NCBI GenBank assembly: GCA_048013815.1
Contig: CM106586.1
Span: 11,160,001 to 11,224,000 of the forward strand
DNA from: Setoptus koraiensis
Taxonomy: Eukaryota > Animalia > Arthropoda
Direction of reading: 5' to 3'
DNA: 64,000 nt
In this document: positions 43,120 through 52,835 of the stretch, one piece after another
How positions within the stretch are numbered: the stretch's first letter is position 1
Layout of the letters: every line of letters starts with the position of its first letter
Program-made: the position numbers and the translations under genes
Notes under the pieces: generated by a model
The model's database searches: none
What the model was told of the DNA's origin: nothing
The model's input: the letters and a program-made list of their open reading frames with translations, nothing else

Positions 43120-45177
43120 ATGGAAAATGCCGAACAAGTAGAGAGCCTTTGGCACGATTTACACGACAAACAACTTCTTGCTATAGATTTGAGACGATTT
43201 CTTGAGGCTTGTCAACTAAATTACATAATGAGTGAGAACTTGATCAGATGGACAAAAATTTATTTCACCAATGAAACAAGCAAAAATAATGGTTCCTCGA
43301 ATAAATTATCCAAAGGTGTTGAGAGGATAGATCCAGAACAAAGTTCTGTAGTTGAGTCAGTAAAAACAATTGTAACGAGCCTGATAGAGTTACTTAGACT
43401 AAACTCCATAATTTACTACGCCTACGATGAAGTGAATAAGTTTGTTGAGGTCAGAATTACAATAATTATCTATTATAATACGCATATAATCTATATAGTC
43501 TTATCAACTACATGTTAATAATTTTCTCTTGAATTCAATTGGCGCAACTCTCAGGACCGGATGACTTGCTCGAATCTGAACAATTGGCCGCTTCATCAAC
43601 TGAAGATACTATTCAATAAGTGCCTCTACTTATTGCGAATGAGCAACTCACATTATGCTAATGATGATACCAAGTATGAGGTGCCAAAATTTTGCTTGCA
43701 AAGTCGCTCTCAATTGCCATCATTCATTTCATCTATTTTGGATCCCATCGGGAAAAAGGCAAACATAAGATATATCACAGATCTGGCAATCGCTAGAATT
43801 GGTAGAGGTGTTTCATTGGCGAACATCTATAGATGCTTAATTGAACTAAGCATTTTTGCAGGCCACAAGAATCTGAGCATTTTGTTGCATAGGATTGTTG
43901 TCAAATCCATTCATTTTGATTCGTGTGAATTCAAATCAAGACTGTTCAATGAAGACTCAATCATCTATAATCTAGAGGCGATGTTACATGAGGAAGAAGA
44001 ATCAGACGACGATAACGACGACGATGAGGAACCTTCCATTGGCGTAAATTCACAACTTGACAGTGATACTAATCCACAGGAATTACAGGAAAAACATTTG
44101 GCGTCATCCATCAGGAACCCTTCTGACAGCTTTAGTGTGAAACACAGAAAGAAGTGCTTGATGGAACACATCGAGCAAAGTTGTTTTAAATTCTTGTGTC
44201 GATTGTGTTCTCATTTGACAACTTTCAGCGTGAGCCTAAATGATAAATGTACTCATTGTCAACAGAATATATATTTTTGTTCGTTCTCATTTGAGCCCAT
44301 TGATATTGTCGATTTGAGTTTTGATTTCGAAATCAATCAAGTAAAAGATATTCTGAAACAGAATGTCAGACCTCATCTAAGAAACTTGACGAAATCATTA
44401 TCCGAGTCGATTAAGACAGAGGCGCTTACGTCTGATGGACCAGACCATGGATCACCAGATGGATCAGGCTATTCTTCATCTAATAGATCAAAAACTTTCA
44501 CTGAGACCACTATCAACGCTAAAAGTGGAAAACTGGTAGAAAAGATGACATTGACAATGAATTCTGATAGTAATAGCGACAATGACGGTGATGCGAATGA
44601 AACAAATGACTATCGTAGTATAACACAGTATGAATCTGCAGATTTTAACGAGATCCATCAATTGGAACCAGTCGATGAAATAGTGCGACAATACTATACC
44701 TCAGATTTCCAATATCAAGACGAACAAAAAGAGTTGACTGAGAGCTTCAAGCTTTTGAATTATTATCTCTTCGAGACATCAATAGCTAAGACGAACGCAT
44801 CTGAGCACATAGACAGGAAGACATATTTCAAATCTCTTCTCAAAGCGCCATTGAGCGTAAGAAAAGACAACTTGAATGTGATGAAACTGATCAACTACTG
44901 TGATCTAATTATCTTGGAGCCAACAGCTTTCGAGCATTCAATCAGAATCTTAGATTCTACTACTGCTCACCAAGAAAAGATATTTCTAAAAACAAGGAAC
45001 TTTGTTTCAATCTATTGGTGTAGTTTAGGTTGTCAGGCTATCTTTGATCGAAAAGTAGTGGAAGTATTGAGCGCTGACTTGAGATTGTCCATTTTGTCTA
45101 AGCCAAACGAGCAAGCTCATCAAAATGATCTAATACCCTGTCCAATCTGTAAGTCCAATCTTACAGTGCTAGAATGA
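43120..45177 (+). CDS. Uncharacterised ~650-aa protein with Cys clusters and an acidic tract, 2 predicted exons
   Basis: Exon 43120-43449, intron 43450-43554 (GT..CAG, phase 0), exon 43555-45177. CRLCSH...CTHC, CSLGC and CPIC motifs; EEEESDDDNDDDEE tract. Confidence 0.75.
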
Positions 45178-45731
45178 TAGTCTAAAATACCTCAAAGTCT
45201 ATTCAGATAGAACAAACAGTGGGTACAAAGGGCCTGCATTTACCCTGCATTGACAGTTGGAAGCTACATCATTTCTCAAATTCGTAAATCAGCATCAATA
45301 AAAGACATATTCTTAACTGTTGTTGATTTGATTAATCAACAAAGATTTAAGGTGAAAGTTGCACTTCTCATCTGAATCTCCAAGAAATGAACAGCTCAAC
45401 ATCGAAACTTTTTGAAGCTTTTTATACACGTAACGAGTCATTCGCGTGGACTTGATTACAAAAATCTATTTCAACTAATAATTTACCCAATAAATATTCT
45501 AAGTATACACAAGTTCTTAGGAGGTCTGCAATTGCTGTCTCAGGAGAGATCATTCACATATCTGTCTATTATAAATATTAAAAATTATACGTATCTTCAG
45601 GAAATCAACGATGACTTATAGTTAAGATTGGTTAGCGACTTGGTGAGGTATCCAGTAAGATGCATTGAGGGTAGAATGAATACCAGATAACAGAATCTTG
45701 TTTGCAGCAGTAAGTAATACCAAAATTATAT

Positions 45732-48352
45732 CTATATGATACGAAAAAAACTGCTCTTCTCATGACTCTGAGTAGCAGATTGCAACTTGTTTTGCTCTTC
45801 TGGACTCAGTTTTAGCATTGTCGACAATACCGGTATCAGTCTTTGTTTCTCCGCCTGGCCATCCAAAGACACAAATTTGATAACTATATTTTTGAGGTAC
45901 TCTAAGTTATCAGCAAGGTCTAGTCTGTCGTGTCCCCGCTGTATTCTTCTTATTTCTTCTTTGAGTGCGGTGACCTGATCAGATAGAAGCTTGTTGGTTT
46001 TCTCGCTTTCTAAATAAGCTTGCGTCAAATAGTCTATTTGAGCATGGGCATCATTCAATATAGACGATTTTCCACCGAGGATCTCAACTGGGGCGGCCTT
46101 GAATGGTAGGCCTACTATTATAAAGACAGTAATAAAAAAAGTAAAAGTCAAATGTTTCGTTCGAAAAATTAGACAGAGATTATTCAGCAACATTAAGAAG
46201 ATAAATAGTTCTAGTGATCTTACTGACCATTAGTATACAGCAATTCGCTGTGGCGTCCCACCCTAAGGGGAAGAACATCCTTATTCGATGGGTCAGGTGA
46301 ATCATCCATCAGTGTGAGGTCAAGGTTTGACCTACTCGGATTGTCACTGGATATCGATGGCTCATTATTATTTTCTGAGGATTCTTTTCTATCGCACAGT
46401 TGATCTCCACTCGACTGGATATAGCCATTTACATCATAATAGTTGATTTTATCCACTCGTGTCTCGATGTTGGCAGTAGATTCGGAAAGATTTTTTAGGG
46501 GATTCAATCCATTGAATTGCTCTAATGTAATTTTAAGTTCGGTATTCTCCGTCTGCATTTTGATCAATTTTTCTTCCAATTGAATTATTTCTTGCGAGGC
46601 TTTATTCTTAAACTCCACAAGGTTGTTCAATTCCAGAATCTTATCGTCAATTTCTTTCTTATTCGAAGAAGTCGCTTCTAGCAATTTTTGTCTAAAGGAA
46701 TTTAAATTTATGGAAAACGAAAGGAAATTAATCAGATGAATATTCAAGAATTGGACCAATCTTTTATATCGATATTAATGTCACTTACTCTAGAGTGGAA
46801 ATTTGACCCTTCAGACTTTCATTAGAGATCTTGAGTTGCTTCAATTTCTCTTGCTCAAAAGTTCGGATAGAATTCGCTTGGACTAAATTAGCGTCTTGCA
46901 TTAACTGTGAAACTTTGAGTTTATAGTTTTCAAATTCTAAATTCAAGGAATGAAGGTCATCTTCTGAAGATTTCAATTGCTGTTTCAATGATTGCACTTT
47001 TGTTTCAAATGATGCTCTTAGCTTTTCGTGGTTGATCCTCTCAGTATCTAAAGCCAATTGTAAAGTGGATAATTCTTCTCTAAGTTGTTTACACTCATTC
47101 TTAAAGGAAACAGAATCTGCCGAGATCTTAGAAGATTCAGATCTTAAAAGTTCTAGATCTCGCAATGTGATGTGGTATTTCTTTTCTGTGGCTTGGATAG
47201 TTTCGGTCATATCTTTAAGTTTAGCTTTAAGCTGATCTTTCTGTTCAACTTGCAACTTTATATCGGCCAGCTTACTTTCTAATTCAAAAATTATGTTCGA
47301 TTTTTTGTCTAGCTGAAGCTTGAGATCTTTGATATCCTCATCTGGTTTAAGCTGGGTATGTAACCTAAATTTCTTCTTTATAGTTTCATAGTCATCAAGG
47401 ATGCGGTCGTACTCAGTTTGGAGACTCTAAAAAAGGCAAATTTATACAAGTATATCTAAATTAGTATTGTGATCATTATAGATGATCGGAAGTGTATAGT
47501 AAAGAATATCCATTGAACATACATTGAAGTTTTTGACTTGCTGTGAGTAGAGTAAGGTCACTCGACTATTTTCTTTCTCGGCAACATCCAACTTTTCATT
47601 CGTTGCTTGAAGCTGATACAATAGGCAGGGTTAGAATAGTTTTGTTAGATCTCTATAATTAGTGAGAAATCATGGATGAGATCAATACCTATACTTACTT
47701 CGTTCCTGCTCTTTGCTAGATCTTTCTTTAATTTCACAGCTAGGGCTTTGAATTTGGAAAGTTTGTCGTCATCATCGGTCGGTGCTGGAGTTGGACTCAT
47801 CCCATAATTTGTGATTGCAATGGCACTTTGATTTACCTGTACGGTTTCGCCTTTGAAGCCTATATAGTAGATTCTGCATGGTTTGTTTTCGTTGTCCTCG
47901 ATGTTATTATTGGCGAAATATATTGATAGGTTACTGGCATTGAAAAATTTGGTTTGCTTGACACTGTACTCTACTAGTCCTTGTGGATCGTGGCTCATCT
48001 GGAATTCTTGATCCGGTTCGGAATTCGCATCATCGAAGGACATCCTGAGCCGATTTTTGAACAATTTCATTCGTGACAACTCCTCTGAGGCTATAACTAT
48101 CATACTCTTTATTTTAACATCACCAGTGAACGGTATGTTGAAAAGGAGTTCAGCATCTGTATCAGATTCAACATATCTGTCTTTGTCTAGTCGATCCGAG
48201 TACGGTTTGAATACTGTCCTAGCGGAGCCATCTATTTTTTCATTGAGGCATTCCACATTATTGAAATCGATTGCATCACGTAGGCAATTGCTATCCGAAC
48301 TGGTGTTTCCTTTATCGCTGGAACCATTGTAATCGTGGCTGATGTCGCACAT
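45732..48352 (-). CDS. Chimeric gene: N-terminal PITH domain (PITHD1 duplicate) fused to GCC2/GCC185-like coiled coil and C-terminal GRIP domain; 5 exons, about 741 aa
   Basis: Exons 48352-47699, 47612-47523, 47426-46789, 46691-46228 and 46111-45732 total 2226 nt with consistent phases. The PITH sequence runs without stop or intron into KFKALAVKLKKDL. The GRIP segment is NLEYLKNIVIKF...RLIPVLSTMLKLSPEE. Confidence 0.85.
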
Positions 48353-48991
48353 TATCCGTTTGTTTTTTATGATTAAACAAAAGGAATGATAATAGTATCC
48401 AACAATAATATGATTTTACCATAAATATTTGTTTAATAAGACAAAATTCTCGTTGTTCATACGAATGTTCATATGAAAAAATATATGCTCTTCTCACTTA
48501 TCGTTTTCTAAAATTATATCGTCATAGATAATGGTGCCCATCGAATTATTCTCTTTGGGGTTACATTGATGAAAATTTGTATTAGCATATATAGAAACGA
48601 TTAATATAATATCTGTTGAACCTAATTAGAAGAATATACCTGCCTCCCGTCGTTGGCCGGCAATCTATGTAAATACATTTTTTACTGTCAGCGGTGGTGT
48701 TTTGAATGACAACACGCTGTCGCGGGAATGCAGTTTGCATCACATATTCACACACCGCACACAAACGATAATGCATACACTTGAGGCACTTCAGATTATA
48801 TGATCCAAATAAACAAAAGCTGACAACCCATATGACTGCGAAAGGAGATTCTAGAGATTGTTTTCTTATGATAACATCATTATAATACCTATTCCATCTA
48901 CCAATAAAAGAATTCGAGGAAAATTAATCTTCCATTTCCATCGGAGCCACTGAAATATTTTTGCATTAAGACACTCATAAACAAGAAGAAA
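48353..48991. promoter_or_regulatory. Probable bidirectional promoter between PITH-GRIP chimera and PITHD1
   Basis: 639-bp AT-rich spacer between two divergent ATGs. Inferred from position only. Confidence 0.4.
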
Positions 48992-49621
48992 ATGTGCGAT
49001 CACAATCACGACCACGACGGTTGTTGCGACCACGGAGACAGCGTTGATAGCAACATGTCCATTGCCTACAGTCTTTATAATAAGATCGACACCAATAATT
49101 TGGAATGCCTCAACGAAAAGATAGACGGCTCGGGAAAGACAGTGTTTAAACCCTACTCAGAGCGACTAAACCTAGACAACTATGTTGAATCGGACACAGA
49201 CGCTGATCTCCTCTTCAACATACCATTCACTGGTGACGTTAAAATAAAGAGTATGATAGTAATAGCCTCGCAGGAGTTGTCACGCATGAAACTGTTCAAA
49301 AACCGTCTCAGGATGTCGTTCGATGACATACACAATGAACCGGATCAAGAATTTGAAATCAGCCACGACCCCCAAGGAGTAGTGGAGTACAGTGTCAAAC
49401 CAACTAAGTTCTTCAATGTTCATCATCTATCAATATATTTCCACAACACTGCCATTGATGACAATGAAAATCCTTGCCGAATCTACTATATTGGTTTAAA
49501 GGGAGAATTTACACAAGTGGATCGTAATGCTATTGTTATTGCCAATTATGAGATACGTCCAACAGCCGCACCGAATGATCCAGTCAATCTGACCGAAACT
49601 AATGTTCATCAAGTTCAGTAA
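48992..49621 (+). CDS. PITHD1: PITH domain-containing protein 1, intronless
   Basis: His/Cys-rich N-terminus; ECLNE...VFKP...YVESDTDADLLFNIPFTGDVKIKS, MKLFKNR..MSFDD, PDQEF, TKFFNVHHLSIYF, RIYYIGLKGEF, ANYE. Confidence 0.95.
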   Translation: MCDHNHDHDGCCDHGDSVDSNMSIAYSLYNKIDTNNLECLNEKIDGSGKTVFKPYSERLNLDNYVESDTDADLLFNIPFTGDVKIKSMIVIASQELSRMKLFKNRLRMSFDDIHNEPDQEFEISHDPQGVVEYSVKPTKFFNVHHLSIYFHNTAIDDNENPCRIYYIGLKGEFTQVDRNAIVIANYEIRPTAAPNDPVNLTETNVHQVQ

Positions 49622-50306
49622 AGAGATCCAACTACTACTTGTCTTATCTAACCATATCATAGTAGCTAAACTTCAAACCTATCCGCCTCAACAACCAGTA
49701 CATGCTCAAAGTCATTTCCTATCGCTTGTAAAGTTGCATAATAAAGTGTCACTCAAATCCTTCGAGGGGTAACCTCTTTTTTTGATGTTATAACCATCAA
49801 CTCACACTTTTAAAAAAATCTATTCAAGGTCAGATTTTTTTCATTATTATGATTGGCCTTTCTAGACTGGAGTGTAAAGGCCAGAGTAATTTCACCGGAA
49901 ATCTAGAACGATGCATTATGTTTAAATCAGTGGTGTTAGTGAGAGATGTGGCGTCCAAAGTTGCTGTCGAATTTGATTTATTATTATTATTAGTTAGTCA
50001 TTTGGTAATTTACAGTGTTGCTAATAACAAGTTGCTTGCGTGTTTTCTATTGTATTTATCATTCATCACAAGAGTTTTCATACATTTGTTTACTACTACA
50101 GCCCGATCAATTTTAGTATTATTTGTGTATCCGAAAGAGTGTGGGAGTTGTTAATTTTAAGAAAAAATACGTGTTGTTTAAAATTGAATGATGTATATTC
50201 ATCCTTGATTGCGAGTTCCAATTAATGCCAATTGAAGATCAACGTAAATAATTAATAAAAATTAATAAAGGCGATCTCATGTATTGTGAAGAGGAGATTA
50301 TTGCTG

Positions 50307-51573
50307 TCAGTAATTGGCGCTATGGTCGTAATTCACTCTTCTCGTTATAGTTCTTTTATGGGTTGTTGTGACAGGTGCATGATGATGGACGGGACAATCC
50401 CCTGAGTTAGCATAAAGATCTGGAGTTTTGGTGATACGTGTTACAACACTTGTGGTTGTTCGAGGATATTCTTTGTCCACTTTATGAGCTGGAACAAATA
50501 AACCGTGATTCCTTTGGCAAAAGAAATACCTGTTGCAAATTAAAAATTAAAATATAGAAATAAATTAAGATCTCGACCTGTGAATGAATAACATAAAAAA
50601 CGAACGTGATCGACTGTTCGTAACACTGGAACTTTTCACTCGAATTGAACGATTAAGATCCATTACGTACCTTCTTCCCTGCACCGCACCGTCGTTCTTT
50701 CCAAACGGACTATCCAATTCAACACCTGCCCATTGACCCGAACCAAAACTTGTTTCACCGAGAAATCTCAGCATACCAGTTAATGTGCCTTGCGTTGAAT
50801 TGACACAAACTCTTTCACCAACTCTGAGATTTGTTTGAAAATATTCCTCTCTTGAGACTCTACCGCTTGGAGTTGCCGATCTAGCTCGTGACGAGGATCG
50901 CTTTGATGGGCTGGGTGTTCGGGGAGGTACATAAGCCACACGAGAGGCATACACCCTATCTGGTCGTCTTGGTAAAGCATAATGGGGTATCGGCGAATGT
51001 GTGGTGCTAGTGATTGTCTTCGAAACTTGACGACGTCCATCGGGCGACCTATATTGAGAGCGGCGCACTATGACATCCTTGTTTAAGTCTGAATGCGATC
51101 GTGTTCGAACAAACTCGTCATCCTCTAAGATACCATCCGCCGAGGAAGAATTATGCAAAAGGCACTGTTCGAATCCGGGTGCCGGCGTGCGACTCAGACG
51201 ATGCAATCTGACAAAATCACCACGGTTGTTCTCACACTGGAAATATTCCTTTCCTCTAACGACACCATTGTGCTTACCAATTGGTTCGTCGTAAACTACT
51301 CCGGCAAGATCGCCAGTTGTGAATTTTGTCTCGCCAATAAATTGAACGAATGCAGGCTTATCTCCATCGACCCAAACACGATCGCCAACAATGAAATCGT
51401 CTTCAATATCTTCCAATGGAGTATCTGTATTCGAGACAGGAAGAAGAGAAAAACGAATGAGCAACTTACTGTTAGTCAGATGTTTCAAGTGCTCATTGAA
51501 CAGGATGTTTCTATTCTCTCGGCCGTGTTTTATTACCTCTGGGTAGGCTGGTATAACTTGTGGCAGAGTACAT
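50307..51573 (-). CDS. Short two-CAP-Gly-domain protein (CLIP-170/restin N-terminal-like), 3 predicted exons
   Basis: CAP-Gly 1 is FIVGDRVWV..G....FIGET...GDLAGV..DEPIGKHNG...YFQC. CAP-Gly 2 is LRVGERVCV...RFLGETSFGSGQWAGVELDSPFGKNDG, then intron, then RYFFC..NHGLFVP, with a stop at 50307. A CTGACTAAC branch site lies in intron 1. Confidence 0.85.
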
Positions 51574-52835
51574 TGTGCCACCAAAATCAAGATGTATTGG
51601 TCACTTGTTGAATATTTGTCTTATTTCGAAAATGATGATGCTTGATAACACTGCAGAACTCTGGTGCGAACTGTAATTGAATTAGACTTATTAGGTAAAT
51701 GTGCGACTTTAAAACAAAGGAAAATTGTAATGTCTCGAGAAACTTTATGCTGGATATTCTATTGAAAGAACCAACATGATCTTGTACTTTCACTTATTTG
51801 TTGTTGTTGGTTTTTTTTTGAATTGATAGTACCTGTGGAGGTGGGTTTTAGAATATTATGAACCGTTTTCGTTCAATGCTATTCTAATTTGAGCACTCAG
51901 TATTAACAATTCTATTTTAACTACCATCAGGAGTGGCTTACAACAACCATTACAACAAAGGTAATGAAGCAAGCTTGTTAATTTACCTTGCAGATGAAAA
52001 GGTAGATATTTTGATGCCTGATACTTGGGCAATCTTTATGCCAATCTTTCATTATCTTTACTAACATCGTAATCGAAAATTCAATTTAGACTAAGTTACT
52101 TATACATGCTGTCGTTTACTAGATCGCGTAGGCCCTATACAACAATACTATAAATTGATACAGCATACAATTTACAGGTGGGTAGTAATGGTGAGTTGAT
52201 TGAAGTTAACACTCTCCAACTAACACCTACACAAAAATTTATTCTTTGATTATATCCACGACAATACAGTCCCTCTCAAATATGATTCTTGACAAACAAA
52301 CAACAAAAGTAGAAAGTCAACTCGCATTAGTATTTCATAGCGCGTCTAATTCATAATCATTTCGTAAATGATTTGCTCATTCGCAAATTTAGCAAACAAC
52401 AACAACAGTCGTAGCAGTAGATACAAGTGTACATTAATAGTTTCATTGATTAGAAAGTGTTTCAACGTTTTGTTTAATCTATATTTGTTTGTATATCATA
52501 TGAAAAACTTGTTCCTATTCATTATTGTGCATAGTTAATGACCTTGATTGATTTTGTAATCTTGTTAACACGTCATCGATATATGGCTTTCCACAAAAGT
52601 TTTCAGGAACTACTGATGCACACATTCAACAAGTCAACAATTATCTGGACTTTGCATAACAAACAATATGCTATAAGACCAAACACAACAAGTCCTGCTG
52701 TGGAGAGTAATACAAGCTCCAGTCTCATGCTTGTGGTTCTCGATGGCACCAAGATAAACACTAAGGATGGATGCATCACACCGCATAGATGAATATCTTC
52801 TCAAAGATCCATTGAAAGAATGTCGATTTCCTTTA

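What the first reader, a model, noticed from the sequence alone, without database searches (positions are those of the whole stretch)
45732..48352. New chimeric gene: PITH domain fused to a GCC2-like golgin (PITH-coiled coil-GRIP)
Seen: a diverged copy of the neighbouring PITHD1 (long identical blocks such as YVESDTD, LLFNIPFTGDVKIKSMIVIAS, ELSRMKLFKNRLRMSFDD, CRIYYIG) continues inside one exon, at about 47774, into coiled coil (KFKALAVKLKKDL). Four further phase-consistent exons end in a GCC2-type GRIP domain. The parent's His/Cys N-terminus (HNHDHDGCCDH) is eroded, but the PITH core has no stops or frameshifts. Known: GRIP domains target golgins to the trans-Golgi via Arl1, and PITH domains (TXNL1, PITHD1) associate with the 26S proteasome. 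I know of no PITH-GRIP protein. Inference: an inverted PITHD1 duplication replaced the golgin's N-terminus and supplied its promoter, possibly tethering proteasomes to the TGN.
Basis: partly seen in the sequence, partly recalled or inferred. Interest (0 to 1): 0.85.

Follow-up and report, generated by a model that had tools for sequence, protein, structure and literature searches.

The report
Proteasome-binding domain fused to a Golgi tether
In this mite genome, a duplicated copy of the proteasome-binding protein PITHD1 is spliced in frame onto the rod and Golgi anchor of a GCC2-type golgin; the gene is transcribed and kept by selection, and I found this domain combination nowhere else, so it may dock proteasomes at the trans-Golgi.

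Summary
A five-exon gene on the minus strand (48352..45732, 742 aa) encodes four parts:
- a PITH domain (Pfam 1.9e-47);
- a heptad-periodic rod of about 340 aa;
- a disordered linker;
- a GCC2-type Rab-binding domain plus GRIP domain (Pfam 6e-7 and 1e-16).

The PITH part is an inverted copy of the single-exon PITHD1 gene 639 bp upstream, head to head. It is 71% identical in protein and 79% in DNA. DNA homology stops at about 47779, inside exon 1, where the coiled coil begins.

Spliced contigs from two public runs confirm three of the four introns exactly. One of them is the intron that links the PITH exon to the golgin. An independent DNA contig with its own SNPs spans the junction, so this is not an assembly chimera.

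The PITH copy is under purifying selection (dN/dS 0.16-0.20, dS about 1). In neutral simulation the frame stayed open in 0 of 2000 replicates. The copy evolves about four times faster than its parent.

It keeps the residues that in human PITHD1 contact RPN10, and the Asn-Tyr of the RPN11-binding segment. The fusion replaces the tail that plugs the ATPase pore.

I found no PITH+GRIP protein in databases or papers, and the scan had not noted it before. The function, docking proteasomes at the trans-Golgi, is inferred and untested.

The parts
47699..48352 (-). Exon 1 (aa 1-218): start codon, PITH domain, RPN11-type segment and the first 25 residues of the coiled coil
   Evidence: ORF and sequence. 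Pfam PITH 161.5 bits. RNA-like contigs cover 47699-47891 and 47834-48059.
47810..48304 (-). PITH domain core (aa 17-181)
   Evidence: Pfam PF06201, E 1.9e-47. AF2 model has pLDDT above 94 over the core. Best Foldseek hits are the TXNL1 PITH domain on the human 26S proteasome, TM 0.81.
47775..47779 (-). Breakpoint of the duplication: homology to the parent PITHD1 ends and golgin-type sequence begins (about aa 192-193)
   Evidence: blastn alignment ends at 47779. Protein alignment ends at ...PAPTD. Spanned by the independent DNA contig X5 record 7 and the spliced contig X8 record 16.
47613..47698 (-). Intron 1 (86 nt, GT..AG)
   Evidence: Joint 47612|47699 in X8 record 16, which reaches 193 nt into the PITH exon.
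47523..47612 (-). Exon 2 (90 nt, aa 219-248), coiled coil
   Evidence: Model. Its 5' part, 47557-47612, lies in spliced contig X8 record 16.
47427..47522 (-). Intron 2 (96 nt, GT..AG), predicted only
   Evidence: Splice consensus and reading frame. Not covered by any spliced contig.
46789..47426 (-). Exon 3 (aa 249-460), coiled-coil rod
   Evidence: Model. Heptad periodicity z 2.3-4.0. RNA-like contigs cover 46984-47299 and 46789-46955.
46692..46788 (-). Intron 3 (97 nt)
   Evidence: Joint 46691|46789 in X8 record 15.
46228..46691 (-). Exon 4 (aa 461-615): end of the rod, then a Ser/Asn/Pro/Asp-rich disordered linker
   Evidence: Model. Composition.
46115..46227 (-). Intron 4 (113 nt)
   Evidence: Joint 46114|46228 in X7 record 9.
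45732..46114 (-). Exon 5 (aa 616-742 plus stop): Rab-binding coiled coil and GRIP domain
   Evidence: Pfam. RNA-like contigs cover it and the 3' UTR.
45924..46058 (-). GCC2-type Rab-binding domain (aa 635-679)
   Evidence: Pfam PF16704, 29.8 bits against a cut-off of 27. Best PDB sequence hit is 3BBP chain D, human GCC2 Rab6-binding domain, E 0.0013.
45783..45908 (-). GRIP domain (aa 685-726), including the EYLKN tyrosine
   Evidence: Pfam PF01465, 60.9 bits against a cut-off of 24.4. 39-58% identity to GRIP exons of other mites and invertebrates.
48353..48991 (.). 639-bp spacer between the two divergent start codons; presumed bidirectional promoter region
   Evidence: RNA-like contigs at 48451-48658 and 48895-49263 leave about 236 bp uncovered. 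No homology between its two halves.
48992..49621 (+). Parent gene: single-exon PITHD1 (209 aa), with an intact Cys/His N-terminus and C-terminal tail
   Evidence: ORF. Pfam PITH 171 bits. Expressed: contigs cover 48895-49263 and 49305-49539.

Best explanation
This is a real, spliced, selectively maintained chimeric gene of an acariform mite.

Origin. An inverted local duplicate of the intronless PITHD1 gene became the first exon of a GCC2-type golgin. The duplicate lacks its last ~13 codons.

Predicted protein. It is 742 aa long and most likely forms a parallel coiled-coil dimer. The C-terminal Rab-binding and GRIP domains would anchor it on the trans-Golgi through Rab6/Arl1-type GTPases. A rod of about 340 residues (roughly 50 nm) and a flexible linker project away from the membrane. 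At the distal tip, where golgins normally carry their capture motif, sit two PITH domains.

Proposed function. The copy keeps the PITHD1 residues that contact RPN10 and the Asn-Tyr of the RPN11-binding segment. It lacks the pore-plugging tail. The most likely function is therefore to dock 26S proteasomes by their 19S lid near the TGN, possibly damping them locally. It would be a 'proteasome-capturing golgin'.

What is shown: the gene structure, transcription and splicing at three of four junctions, the paralogy, purifying selection, the domain identities and the conserved contact residues.

What is inferred: dimerisation, TGN localisation, proteasome binding, and that the ancestral golgin N-terminus was displaced.

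My odds: real fusion protein about 0.9; the PITH part acts on proteasomes at the Golgi about 0.4.
For: Gene model and domains.

Splicing: spliced contigs match the model exactly at 47612|47699, 46691|46789 and 46114|46228, and no X7 or X8 piece lies in an intron.

Independent DNA: an 8.9-kb contig with its own SNPs, from another sample and study, spans 47486-49700.

Paralogy and age:
- 71% protein and 79% DNA identity.
- Copy and parent are sister at 97/85 support, with branch lengths 0.51 against 0.13.
- dN/dS 0.16-0.20, dS 1.0-1.2.
- 0 of 2000 neutral replicates keep the frame open.
- 47 of 57 family-conserved columns are retained.
- SNPs seen in other samples: 3 synonymous, 1 non-synonymous.

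Fold: AF2 gives pLDDT above 94 for the core and a helix from residue 196. The best structural matches are the TXNL1 PITH domain on the 26S proteasome.

Mechanistic basis, from the PITHD1-26S cryo-EM preprint 10.1101/2024.12.04.626795:
- The PITH core binds RPN10, RPN2 and RPN8.
- Residues 182-197 bind RPN11.
- Residues 199-211 plug the pore.
- The 1-198 truncation still inhibits.

Mapping onto the copy: all seven RPN10 contacts are kept, two of them as Asp/Glu exchanges. N188 and Y189 are kept. The junction falls just after the residue aligned with human position 197.

Golgin logic: the N-terminal module decides what a golgin captures, and transplanting one onto GCC185 transfers that capture (PMC5267433).

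Proteasomes do occur on Golgi membranes (PMC6972958).
Against: - No protein-level, localisation or binding data exist.
- The copy evolves four times faster than its parent. It has lost the N-terminal Cys/His cluster and the near-invariant Glu after the Tyr (E184G). It has changed four of the seven RPN11 contact positions.
- The helix starts only about 3 residues after the RPN11-type segment. A dimeric coiled coil there could clash with the mouth of the ATPase ring, so full PITHD1-like engagement is doubtful.
- Contact mapping used 211-aa Nematostella and Octopus orthologues as a numbering proxy for human PITHD1 (15 of 22 and 14 of 22 listed residues match). It did not use the human sequence itself.
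- The exon 2-3 junction and the 5' end of the mRNA are not covered. Read depth is low (2.5-6), and the kind of runs X7 and X8 is not on record.
- Whether GCC185-type GRIP domains need Arl1 is debated in the literature (my knowledge, not checked here).
Confidence: 0.55

Rival explanations
1. Built-in delivery signal. The PITH domain docks the golgin itself onto the 19S lid. The polypeptide that follows the RPN11-type segment is fed into the ATPase pore. The fusion would then be a short-lived golgin degraded without ubiquitin, and PITH would act as a cis-degron that tunes golgin turnover.
For: In PITHD1 the chain just after residue ~197 enters the substrate channel, and that is where the golgin sequence starts here. 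TXNL1, the other PITH protein, is degraded by the proteasome without ubiquitin after binding it through PITH (PMC12700798 abstract).
Against: Neither PITHD1 nor PITHD1 with 10 extra C-terminal residues is degraded in vitro. The segment after the junction is predicted to be a stable helix or coiled coil, not a floppy initiation region. Long-term purifying selection on a whole 340-aa rod fits a structural role better.
Confidence: 0.13
2. The golgin is the function and PITH has been repurposed or is merely tolerated. The gene would work as the species' GCC2-like TGN tether. The PITH domain would have drifted to a new partner or serve as an inert folded cap, with no link to the proteasome.
For: The copy's branch is four times longer than the parent's. 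There are 25 copy-unique changes against 3 parent-unique ones. Eight family-conserved positions are lost only in the copy, including the Cys/His cluster and E184.
Against: dN/dS of about 0.2 and an open frame over dS of about 1 show that the domain is constrained. The RPN10-contact residues specifically are all kept.
Confidence: 0.22
3. One transcript, two unlinked products, or no fusion protein. Intron-1 retention would give a 235-aa PITH-only protein that stops at 47645. Internal initiation, for example at Met184, would give a golgin without PITH. The 742-aa chimera would be minor or absent.
For: A stop lies 54 nt into intron 1. An in-frame ATG is at residue 184. The 5' end of the mRNA (48060-48352) and intron 2 have no read support.
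Against: The only contig over intron 1 in the RNA-like runs is spliced and runs 193 nt into PITH-coding sequence. All exon phases are compatible. Selection keeps the PITH frame open and continuous with the rod.
Confidence: 0.08
4. Assembly chimera: PITH and golgin sequences were joined wrongly in the assembly.
For: None found. The 100%-identical contig of run X2 may be the window's own source, so it does not count as independent support.
Against: Run X5 comes from another sample and study and has its own SNPs. Its 8.9-kb contig crosses 47779. A spliced contig with its own SNP (47812) also crosses it.
Confidence: 0.02

Closest known systems
PITHD1 (PITH domain-containing protein 1), endogenous 26S proteasome inhibitor
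   Same: The PITH domain is a paralogue, 71% identical to the genome's own PITHD1. It has the same fold. It keeps the RPN10-contact acidic residues and the N-Y of the RPN11-binding segment (after 10.1101/2024.12.04.626795).
   Different: The N-terminal Cys/His cluster is lost. The pore-inserting C-terminal tail is replaced by about 550 aa of golgin. It evolves four times faster. It is part of a predicted membrane-anchored dimeric rod rather than a soluble 24-kDa protein.
TXNL1 (thioredoxin-PITH)
   Same: It is the only well-studied natural fusion of a PITH domain to another module. Its PITH domain docks on RPN2, RPN10 and RPN11 (PMC12700798). It is also the best structural match to the model.
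   Different: In TXNL1 the partner is N-terminal and enzymatic (thioredoxin). Here the partner is C-terminal and is a localisation rod. Sequence identity is only 26-30%.
GCC2 / GCC185, a GRIP-domain golgin of the trans-Golgi
   Same: The C-terminal Rab_bind (PF16704) + GRIP (PF01465) tandem comes after a disordered linker and a coiled-coil rod.
   Different: The rod is only about 340 aa. In its place a distant relative has about 900 aa of ORFs, and human GCC185 has more than 1535 aa (construct 1-Ser1535 in PMC5267433). The N-terminal region is a PITH domain instead of golgin sequence.
Engineered golgin chimeras (N-terminal capture motif transplanted onto GCC185; PMC5267433)
   Same: The modular logic is the same: an N-terminal capture module, an inert rod and a C-terminal address.
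   Different: Those are laboratory constructs that capture vesicles. This is a natural gene whose tip is a proteasome-binding fold.
Golgi-associated proteasomes (GARD; PMC6972958)
   Same: [quoted passage not shown]
   Different: I know of no dedicated golgin-type proteasome tether in that pathway. A link to this gene is speculation.

Membership tests
PITH domain family (PF06201) / PITHD1 | Significant match to the PITH profile above the curated cut-off | tested here: met
   161.5 bits against a cut-off of 23.7, aa 17-181.
PITH domain family (PF06201) / PITHD1 | PITH beta-sandwich fold | tested here: met
   AF2 mean pLDDT 85, core above 94. Foldseek best hits are the TXNL1 PITH domain (9e8o_u, E 4.7e-11, TM 0.81), 1XOY and 1WWY.
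PITH domain family (PF06201) / PITHD1 | PITHD1-type N-terminal Cys/His-rich cluster | tested here: not met
   C12S and H14K. The parent and 85-90% of 48 homologues keep Cys/His.
PITH domain family (PF06201) / PITHD1 | Residues that contact RPN10, RPN2 and RPN8 in the human complex | tested here: met
   The seven RPN10 contacts are kept (E, D, D, D, E, S, D, with two Asp/Glu exchanges). The RPN2 pair is T/K, as in the parent and relatives. The RPN8 pair varies across phyla. Numbering is by proxy orthologues.
PITH domain family (PF06201) / PITHD1 | C-terminal segment that binds RPN11 (human 182-197) | tested here: inconclusive
   N188 and Y189 are kept. Positions 182, 185, 187 and 191 are changed, and they also differ in the parent. 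The near-invariant Glu after the Tyr is lost only in the copy.
PITH domain family (PF06201) / PITHD1 | Free C-terminal tail that enters the ATPase pore (human 199-211) | tested here: not met
   Homology ends at about aa 193, and a helix/coiled coil follows from aa 196.
PITH domain family (PF06201) / PITHD1 | Binds and inhibits the 26S proteasome | not testable with these tools
   Needs pull-down and degradation assays.
GRIP-domain golgin, GCC2/GCC185 type | C-terminal GRIP domain with the conserved tyrosine | tested here: met
   PF01465 at 60.9 bits against a cut-off of 24.4, aa 685-726, 16 residues from the C-terminus. The EYLKN motif is present. The role of the Tyr is from my knowledge.
GRIP-domain golgin, GCC2/GCC185 type | GCC2-specific Rab-binding coiled coil just before the GRIP domain | tested here: met
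   PF16704 at 29.8 bits against a cut-off of 27. 3BBP chain D, E 0.0013.
GRIP-domain golgin, GCC2/GCC185 type | Long coiled-coil rod | tested here: met
   aa 196-535: 58% E/K/Q/L/R/D, 2 Pro and 2 Gly, 3.5-residue periodicity z 2.3-4.0 in 7 of 12 windows, and none in the PITH domain or linker. The rod is shorter than in known GCC2 proteins.
GRIP-domain golgin, GCC2/GCC185 type | Golgin-type N-terminal region collinear with GCC2 | tested here: inconclusive
   The N-terminus is a PITH domain. The rod is not alignable to relatives' upstream exons (E 6.3 for the KxKxLxVxxKKDL motif).
GRIP-domain golgin, GCC2/GCC185 type | Localises to the trans-Golgi through Arl1/Rab6 | not testable with these tools
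   Needs imaging and GTPase binding assays.
Duplication-derived chimeric (fusion) gene | Identifiable parent paralogue and a breakpoint inside an exon | tested here: met
Duplication-derived chimeric (fusion) gene | Both parts on one mature transcript | tested here: met
   X8 record 16 joins PITH-coding 47699-47891 to exon 2. Introns 3 and 4 are also confirmed. Intron 2 and a single full-length molecule are not.
Duplication-derived chimeric (fusion) gene | Maintained by selection | tested here: met
   dN/dS 0.16-0.20. The neutral simulation gives 0 of 2000 open frames.

The most novel reading that the evidence does not exclude
A natural golgin that captures 26S proteasomes instead of vesicles. 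A dimeric rod of about 50 nm, anchored by Rab6/Arl1-type binding at the trans-Golgi, holds two PITH domains at its tip. These clamp the 19S lid at RPN10, RPN2, RPN8 and partly RPN11, without plugging the pore. The result would be a standing, perhaps reversibly silenced, pool of proteasomes at the TGN. It would be the first dedicated organelle-proteasome tether built from a dormancy factor.
Probability: 0.3. Interest if true: 0.85.

Novelty: new variant of a known kind. Interest (0 to 1): 0.68.

Why it matters
PITHD1 has only recently been described as an endogenous 'triple-lock' inhibitor of the 26S proteasome. How proteasomes are positioned at organelles such as the Golgi is largely open.

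Evolution has here done the experiment a cell biologist would design. It put the proteasome-docking part of PITHD1, cut just before the pore plug, on the tip of a TGN-addressed golgin rod. It then kept the result under purifying selection for a long time.

If the PITH tip still binds the 19S lid, several things follow:
- The gene is a ready-made tool and a precedent for targeted proteasome recruitment.
- Golgin tips would be able to evolve non-vesicle cargo.
- It would be a natural separation-of-function allele of PITHD1: docking without plugging.

Even without the functional claim, it is a clean and well-supported case of birth of a chimeric gene. It arose by inverted tandem duplication with an in-exon breakpoint, and a divergent promoter region lies between parent and chimera.

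Tried and rejected
1. Fusion orthologues elsewhere.
- Word-indexed protein search with exon 1: nothing closer than 58%, and no hit covers the coiled-coil tail.
- Exhaustive HMMER search of 1.84 billion representatives: the long PITH proteins among the best 150 are PITH+XPG_N, cyclin+PITH, ECSIT+PITH or carry unrelated tails. None has GRIP.
- JGI metagenome scan: no relative.
- These blanks are weak evidence. The species' own proteins and its near relatives are absent from those libraries. Gene calls on short contigs are single ORFs.

2. Synteny as a test of which locus is ancestral. PITHD1 loci of relatives (L001-L003) and GCC2-like loci (L004-L009) share nothing with the window's flanks. This is uninformative.

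3. Remnants of upstream GCC2 exons in the window. None were found, but even collinear rod exons do not align between these taxa. This is uninformative.

4. The internal motif KLKQLLVVAKKDLAEAK in relative L004 resembles the first golgin residues here. That suggests the fusion starts mid-rod, but the match is not significant (E 6.3). I kept it as a lead only.

5. Human PITHD1 is not in the PDB copy by sequence. Contact mapping therefore used 211-aa proxy orthologues.

6. The sigma-70 promoter scan of the spacer is irrelevant for a eukaryote and I ignored it.

7. Pairwise dS against relatives is saturated, so no branch-specific dN/dS could be computed.

8. The full 742-aa spliced protein has no reference. 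It was therefore never sent to the search or fold tools. Exons were searched separately.

9. Read laying was given 4,101 letters.
Full report
**What is in the sequence**

On the minus strand an ORF starts at 48352. It encodes 193 residues that align end to end with the single-exon PITHD1 gene lying head to head at 48992-49621. The ORF then continues without a stop into ...DDDDKLSKFKALAVKLKKDLAKSRNE.

At DNA level the two copies align from 48271-47779 (copy) to 49085-49574 (parent) at 79% identity. Homology stops at about 47779. The 639-bp spacer shows none.

Following GT-AG sites and the reading frame gives five exons:
- 48352-47699
- 47612-47523
- 47426-46789
- 46691-46228
- 46114-45732

These make a 2,229-nt CDS and a 742-aa product.

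**Domain content**

- Pfam places PITH (PF06201) on aa 17-181, E 1.9e-47.
- The last exon carries the GCC2-type Rab-binding domain (PF16704; 29.8 bits against a cut-off of 27) and GRIP (PF01465; 60.9 bits against 24.4).
- The best solved-structure sequence match of the last exon is the Rab6-binding domain of human GCC2, 3BBP chain D, E 0.0013.
- Residues 196-535 have the make-up of a coiled coil. They are 58% E/K/Q/L/R/D, with two prolines and two glycines. Hydrophobic periodicity at 3.5 residues has z 2.3-4.0 in most windows. That periodicity is absent from the PITH domain and from the Ser/Asn/Pro/Asp-rich linker at 536-632.
- An AlphaFold2 model of exon 1, built on 50 aligned homologues, has pLDDT above 94 over the PITH core. 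It has a low-confidence extended segment at 172-195 and a helix from 196 to the exon end.
- Its best PDB matches are the PITH domain of TXNL1 bound to the human 26S proteasome (E 4.7e-11, TM 0.81).

**Is the junction real?**

I laid four public runs on 45600-49700.

- Run X2 holds the whole stretch in one 11-kb contig with no differences. It may be the window's own source, so I do not count it.
- Run X5 comes from another sample and study. Its 8.9-kb contig covers 47486-49700 and carries its own SNPs. It crosses the breakpoint, intron 1, the spacer and the parent gene.
- Runs X7 and X8 have no recorded kind. Their contigs lie only on exons and UTRs.
- Three of those contigs are spliced exactly as predicted, each skipping a GT..AG interval on the minus strand: 47612|47699, 46691|46789 and 46114|46228.
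- The first of these contigs extends 193 nt into PITH-coding sequence (to 47891, residue 154). It crosses the PITH/coiled-coil breakpoint and then splices to exon 2. PITH and golgin sequence are therefore on one mature RNA.

Not covered are the exon 2-3 junction (exon 2 is 90 nt, so skipping it would also stay in frame) and the first 290 nt of the CDS. Depths are low (2.5-6). The parent gene is expressed too.

**Is the PITH part alive?**

- Copy against parent: dN 0.18-0.20, dS 1.0-1.2, dN/dS 0.16-0.20.
- I evolved the parent sequence neutrally by 0.5 substitutions per site, half of dS. This gave a mean of 7.4 stop codons. None of 2,000 replicates kept the frame open, and indels were not even modelled.
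- In a maximum-likelihood tree of 50 PITHD1 proteins, copy and parent are sister (97/85). All 43 unnamed arthropod-like relatives fall outside that pair (99/96). The duplication is therefore specific to this lineage.
- The copy's branch is four times the parent's, 0.51 against 0.13.
- At sites where the other three sequences agree, the copy has 25 unique changes and the parent 3.
- Of 57 columns at least 85% conserved among 48 other PITHD1 proteins, the copy keeps 47. Eight of its ten departures are its own: the Cys/His cluster (C12S, H14K), S23C, Y25R, G44A, H141N, L166F and E184G.
- SNPs seen in the other samples are three synonymous and one non-synonymous, T181P.

**What the literature adds**

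A cryo-EM preprint on human PITHD1 (10.1101/2024.12.04.626795) reports the following:
- The PITH core binds RPN10 (E45, E48, D71, D73, E75, S115, D117), RPN2 (S144, R145) and RPN8.
- Residues 182-197 occupy the RPN11 active-site region, with Y189 buried.
- Residues 199-211 enter the ATPase pore.
- PITHD1 1-198 still inhibits almost fully. PITHD1 1-178 binds and inhibits weakly.
- Neither PITHD1 nor a +10-residue version is degraded.

Human PITHD1 was not retrievable from the tools. I therefore used the 211-aa Nematostella and Octopus orthologues as numbering proxies. They carry 15 and 14 of the 22 listed residues at the same numbers.

Mapping onto the copy:
- All seven RPN10 contacts are kept, two as Asp/Glu exchanges.
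- The RPN2 pair is T/K, as in the parent and relatives.
- N188 and Y189 are kept.
- Positions 182, 185, 187 and 191 differ.
- The alignment with the parent ends at ...PAPTD, which corresponds to about human position 197.

The fusion therefore removes the pore plug. It keeps the docking core and most of the RPN11-type segment, a natural analogue of the 1-198 truncation. The coiled-coil helix begins about three residues later.

**The golgin side**

Golgins are C-terminally anchored rods whose N-terminal motifs decide what they capture. Adding 38 residues of golgin-84 to the N-terminus of GCC185 transfers vesicle capture (PMC5267433).

- The best named match of the GRIP exon is the oribatid mite Medioppia subpectinata, at 55%.
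- A conserved neighbour gene, pantothenate kinase at 23002-24222, has acariform mites as its best named hits. These are Leptotrombidium, Medioppia, Dinothrombium, Oppia and Tetranychus, at 64-68%. One unnamed Logan protein is 89% identical. The genome is therefore that of an acariform mite not represented in the annotated protein libraries.
- In a distant relative's contig (L004), the Rab_bind+GRIP exon is preceded by five same-strand coiled-coil ORFs, about 900 aa in all. One of them holds an internal motif, KLKQLLVVAKKDLAEAK, resembling the first golgin residues here.
- This fits the idea that PITH displaced the N-terminal half of a longer GCC2. However, the rods are too diverged for a significant alignment.
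- I could not search the rest of the genome for a second GCC2.

**Is the architecture known?**

I found no sign that it is.
- None of the best 150 of 985 PITH-containing representatives has GRIP. The long ones are PITH+XPG_N, cyclin+PITH, ECSIT+PITH or have unrelated tails, and are probably merged gene models.
- ESM Atlas clusters show PITH alone, thioredoxin+PITH and Ribosomal_L3+PITH.
- The one paper that contains both domain names is an unrelated proteomics table.
- A metagenome scan found no relative.
- The scan's earlier notes on this genome hold no PITH or GCC2 entry.

These negatives are limited. Only the top 150 hits were visible, many gene calls are single ORFs, and close relatives are missing from the libraries.

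**Interpretation**

Shown:
- a transcribed, correctly spliced chimeric gene under purifying selection;
- its origin in an inverted duplicate of the adjacent PITHD1, with a breakpoint inside exon 1;
- a GCC2-type C-terminus.

Inferred:
- It forms a dimer anchored at the trans-Golgi.
- Its distal PITH domains dock the 19S lid and so concentrate proteasomes near the TGN, perhaps restraining them. Proteasomes are known to act at that membrane (PMC6972958).

Rivals:
- PITH acts as a cis-acting, ubiquitin-independent delivery signal that shortens the golgin's life.
- PITH has been repurposed to another partner.
- The products are separate, through intron retention or internal initiation.
- It is an assembly chimera. 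This is excluded.

The faster evolution of the copy, the loss of E184 and the closeness of the helix to the RPN11-type segment argue against a simple PITHD1-like inhibitory mode. They fit docking through the core better.

**Verdict**

This is a new variant built from known parts. It is lineage-restricted but old and maintained by selection, and it suggests a clear, testable function.

Noticed in passing
window 48451-48658 and 48895-49263: RNA-like contigs lie in the spacer between the two divergent genes. They leave only about 236 bp uncovered. This suggests that the chimera and its parent share a compact bidirectional promoter and may be co-regulated.
   Followed up: partly
window 47486-49700 (run X5, record 7): In run X5 this 8.9-kb contig has a mean word depth of 45. 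The neighbouring pieces over 45600-47451 have a depth of 3-4. Something on the far part of that contig, beyond 49700, is much more deeply covered: a repeat, a captured target or a highly represented region.
   Followed up: no
window 50565-51590 (-): An ORF with two CAP-Gly domains (Pfam 9.3e-38), probably a CLIP-170-like microtubule plus-end protein, lies next to PITHD1.
   Followed up: partly
window 43561-45177 (+): A 538-aa intron-free ORF converges on the chimera's 3' end. It has no Pfam match, an acidic Asp/Glu run and a C-terminal CPICK motif. Its identity is unknown.
   Followed up: partly
window 47812 (T>G in run X8): The only non-synonymous polymorphism seen is T181P. It sits in the RPN11-type segment, two residues before the conserved Tyr, at the position aligned with human C187.
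   Followed up: partly
L004:1250-5310 (+): A relative's GCC2-like gene is split into six same-strand ORFs of about 900 aa in all. Its rod contains a KxKxLxVxxKKDL motif like the first golgin residues of the chimera. This may be a recurring GCC2 rod motif that marks where the fusion cut in.
   Followed up: partly
proteins P0134, P0132, P0222; Atlas row 2: Other long 'PITH fusions' exist in public predictions: PITH+XPG_N, cyclin+PITH and ECSIT_N+PITH. They look like merged neighbouring genes. A 62-member Ascomycota cluster with Ribosomal_L3+PITH may be a genuine second natural PITH fusion.
   Followed up: no
window 23002-24222 (+): An intron-free pantothenate kinase (Fumble, E 1.4e-120) is present. 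An unnamed Logan protein (P0292) is 89% identical, which points to a sequenced close relative. That relative would be the place to look for the chimera's orthologue.
   Followed up: partly
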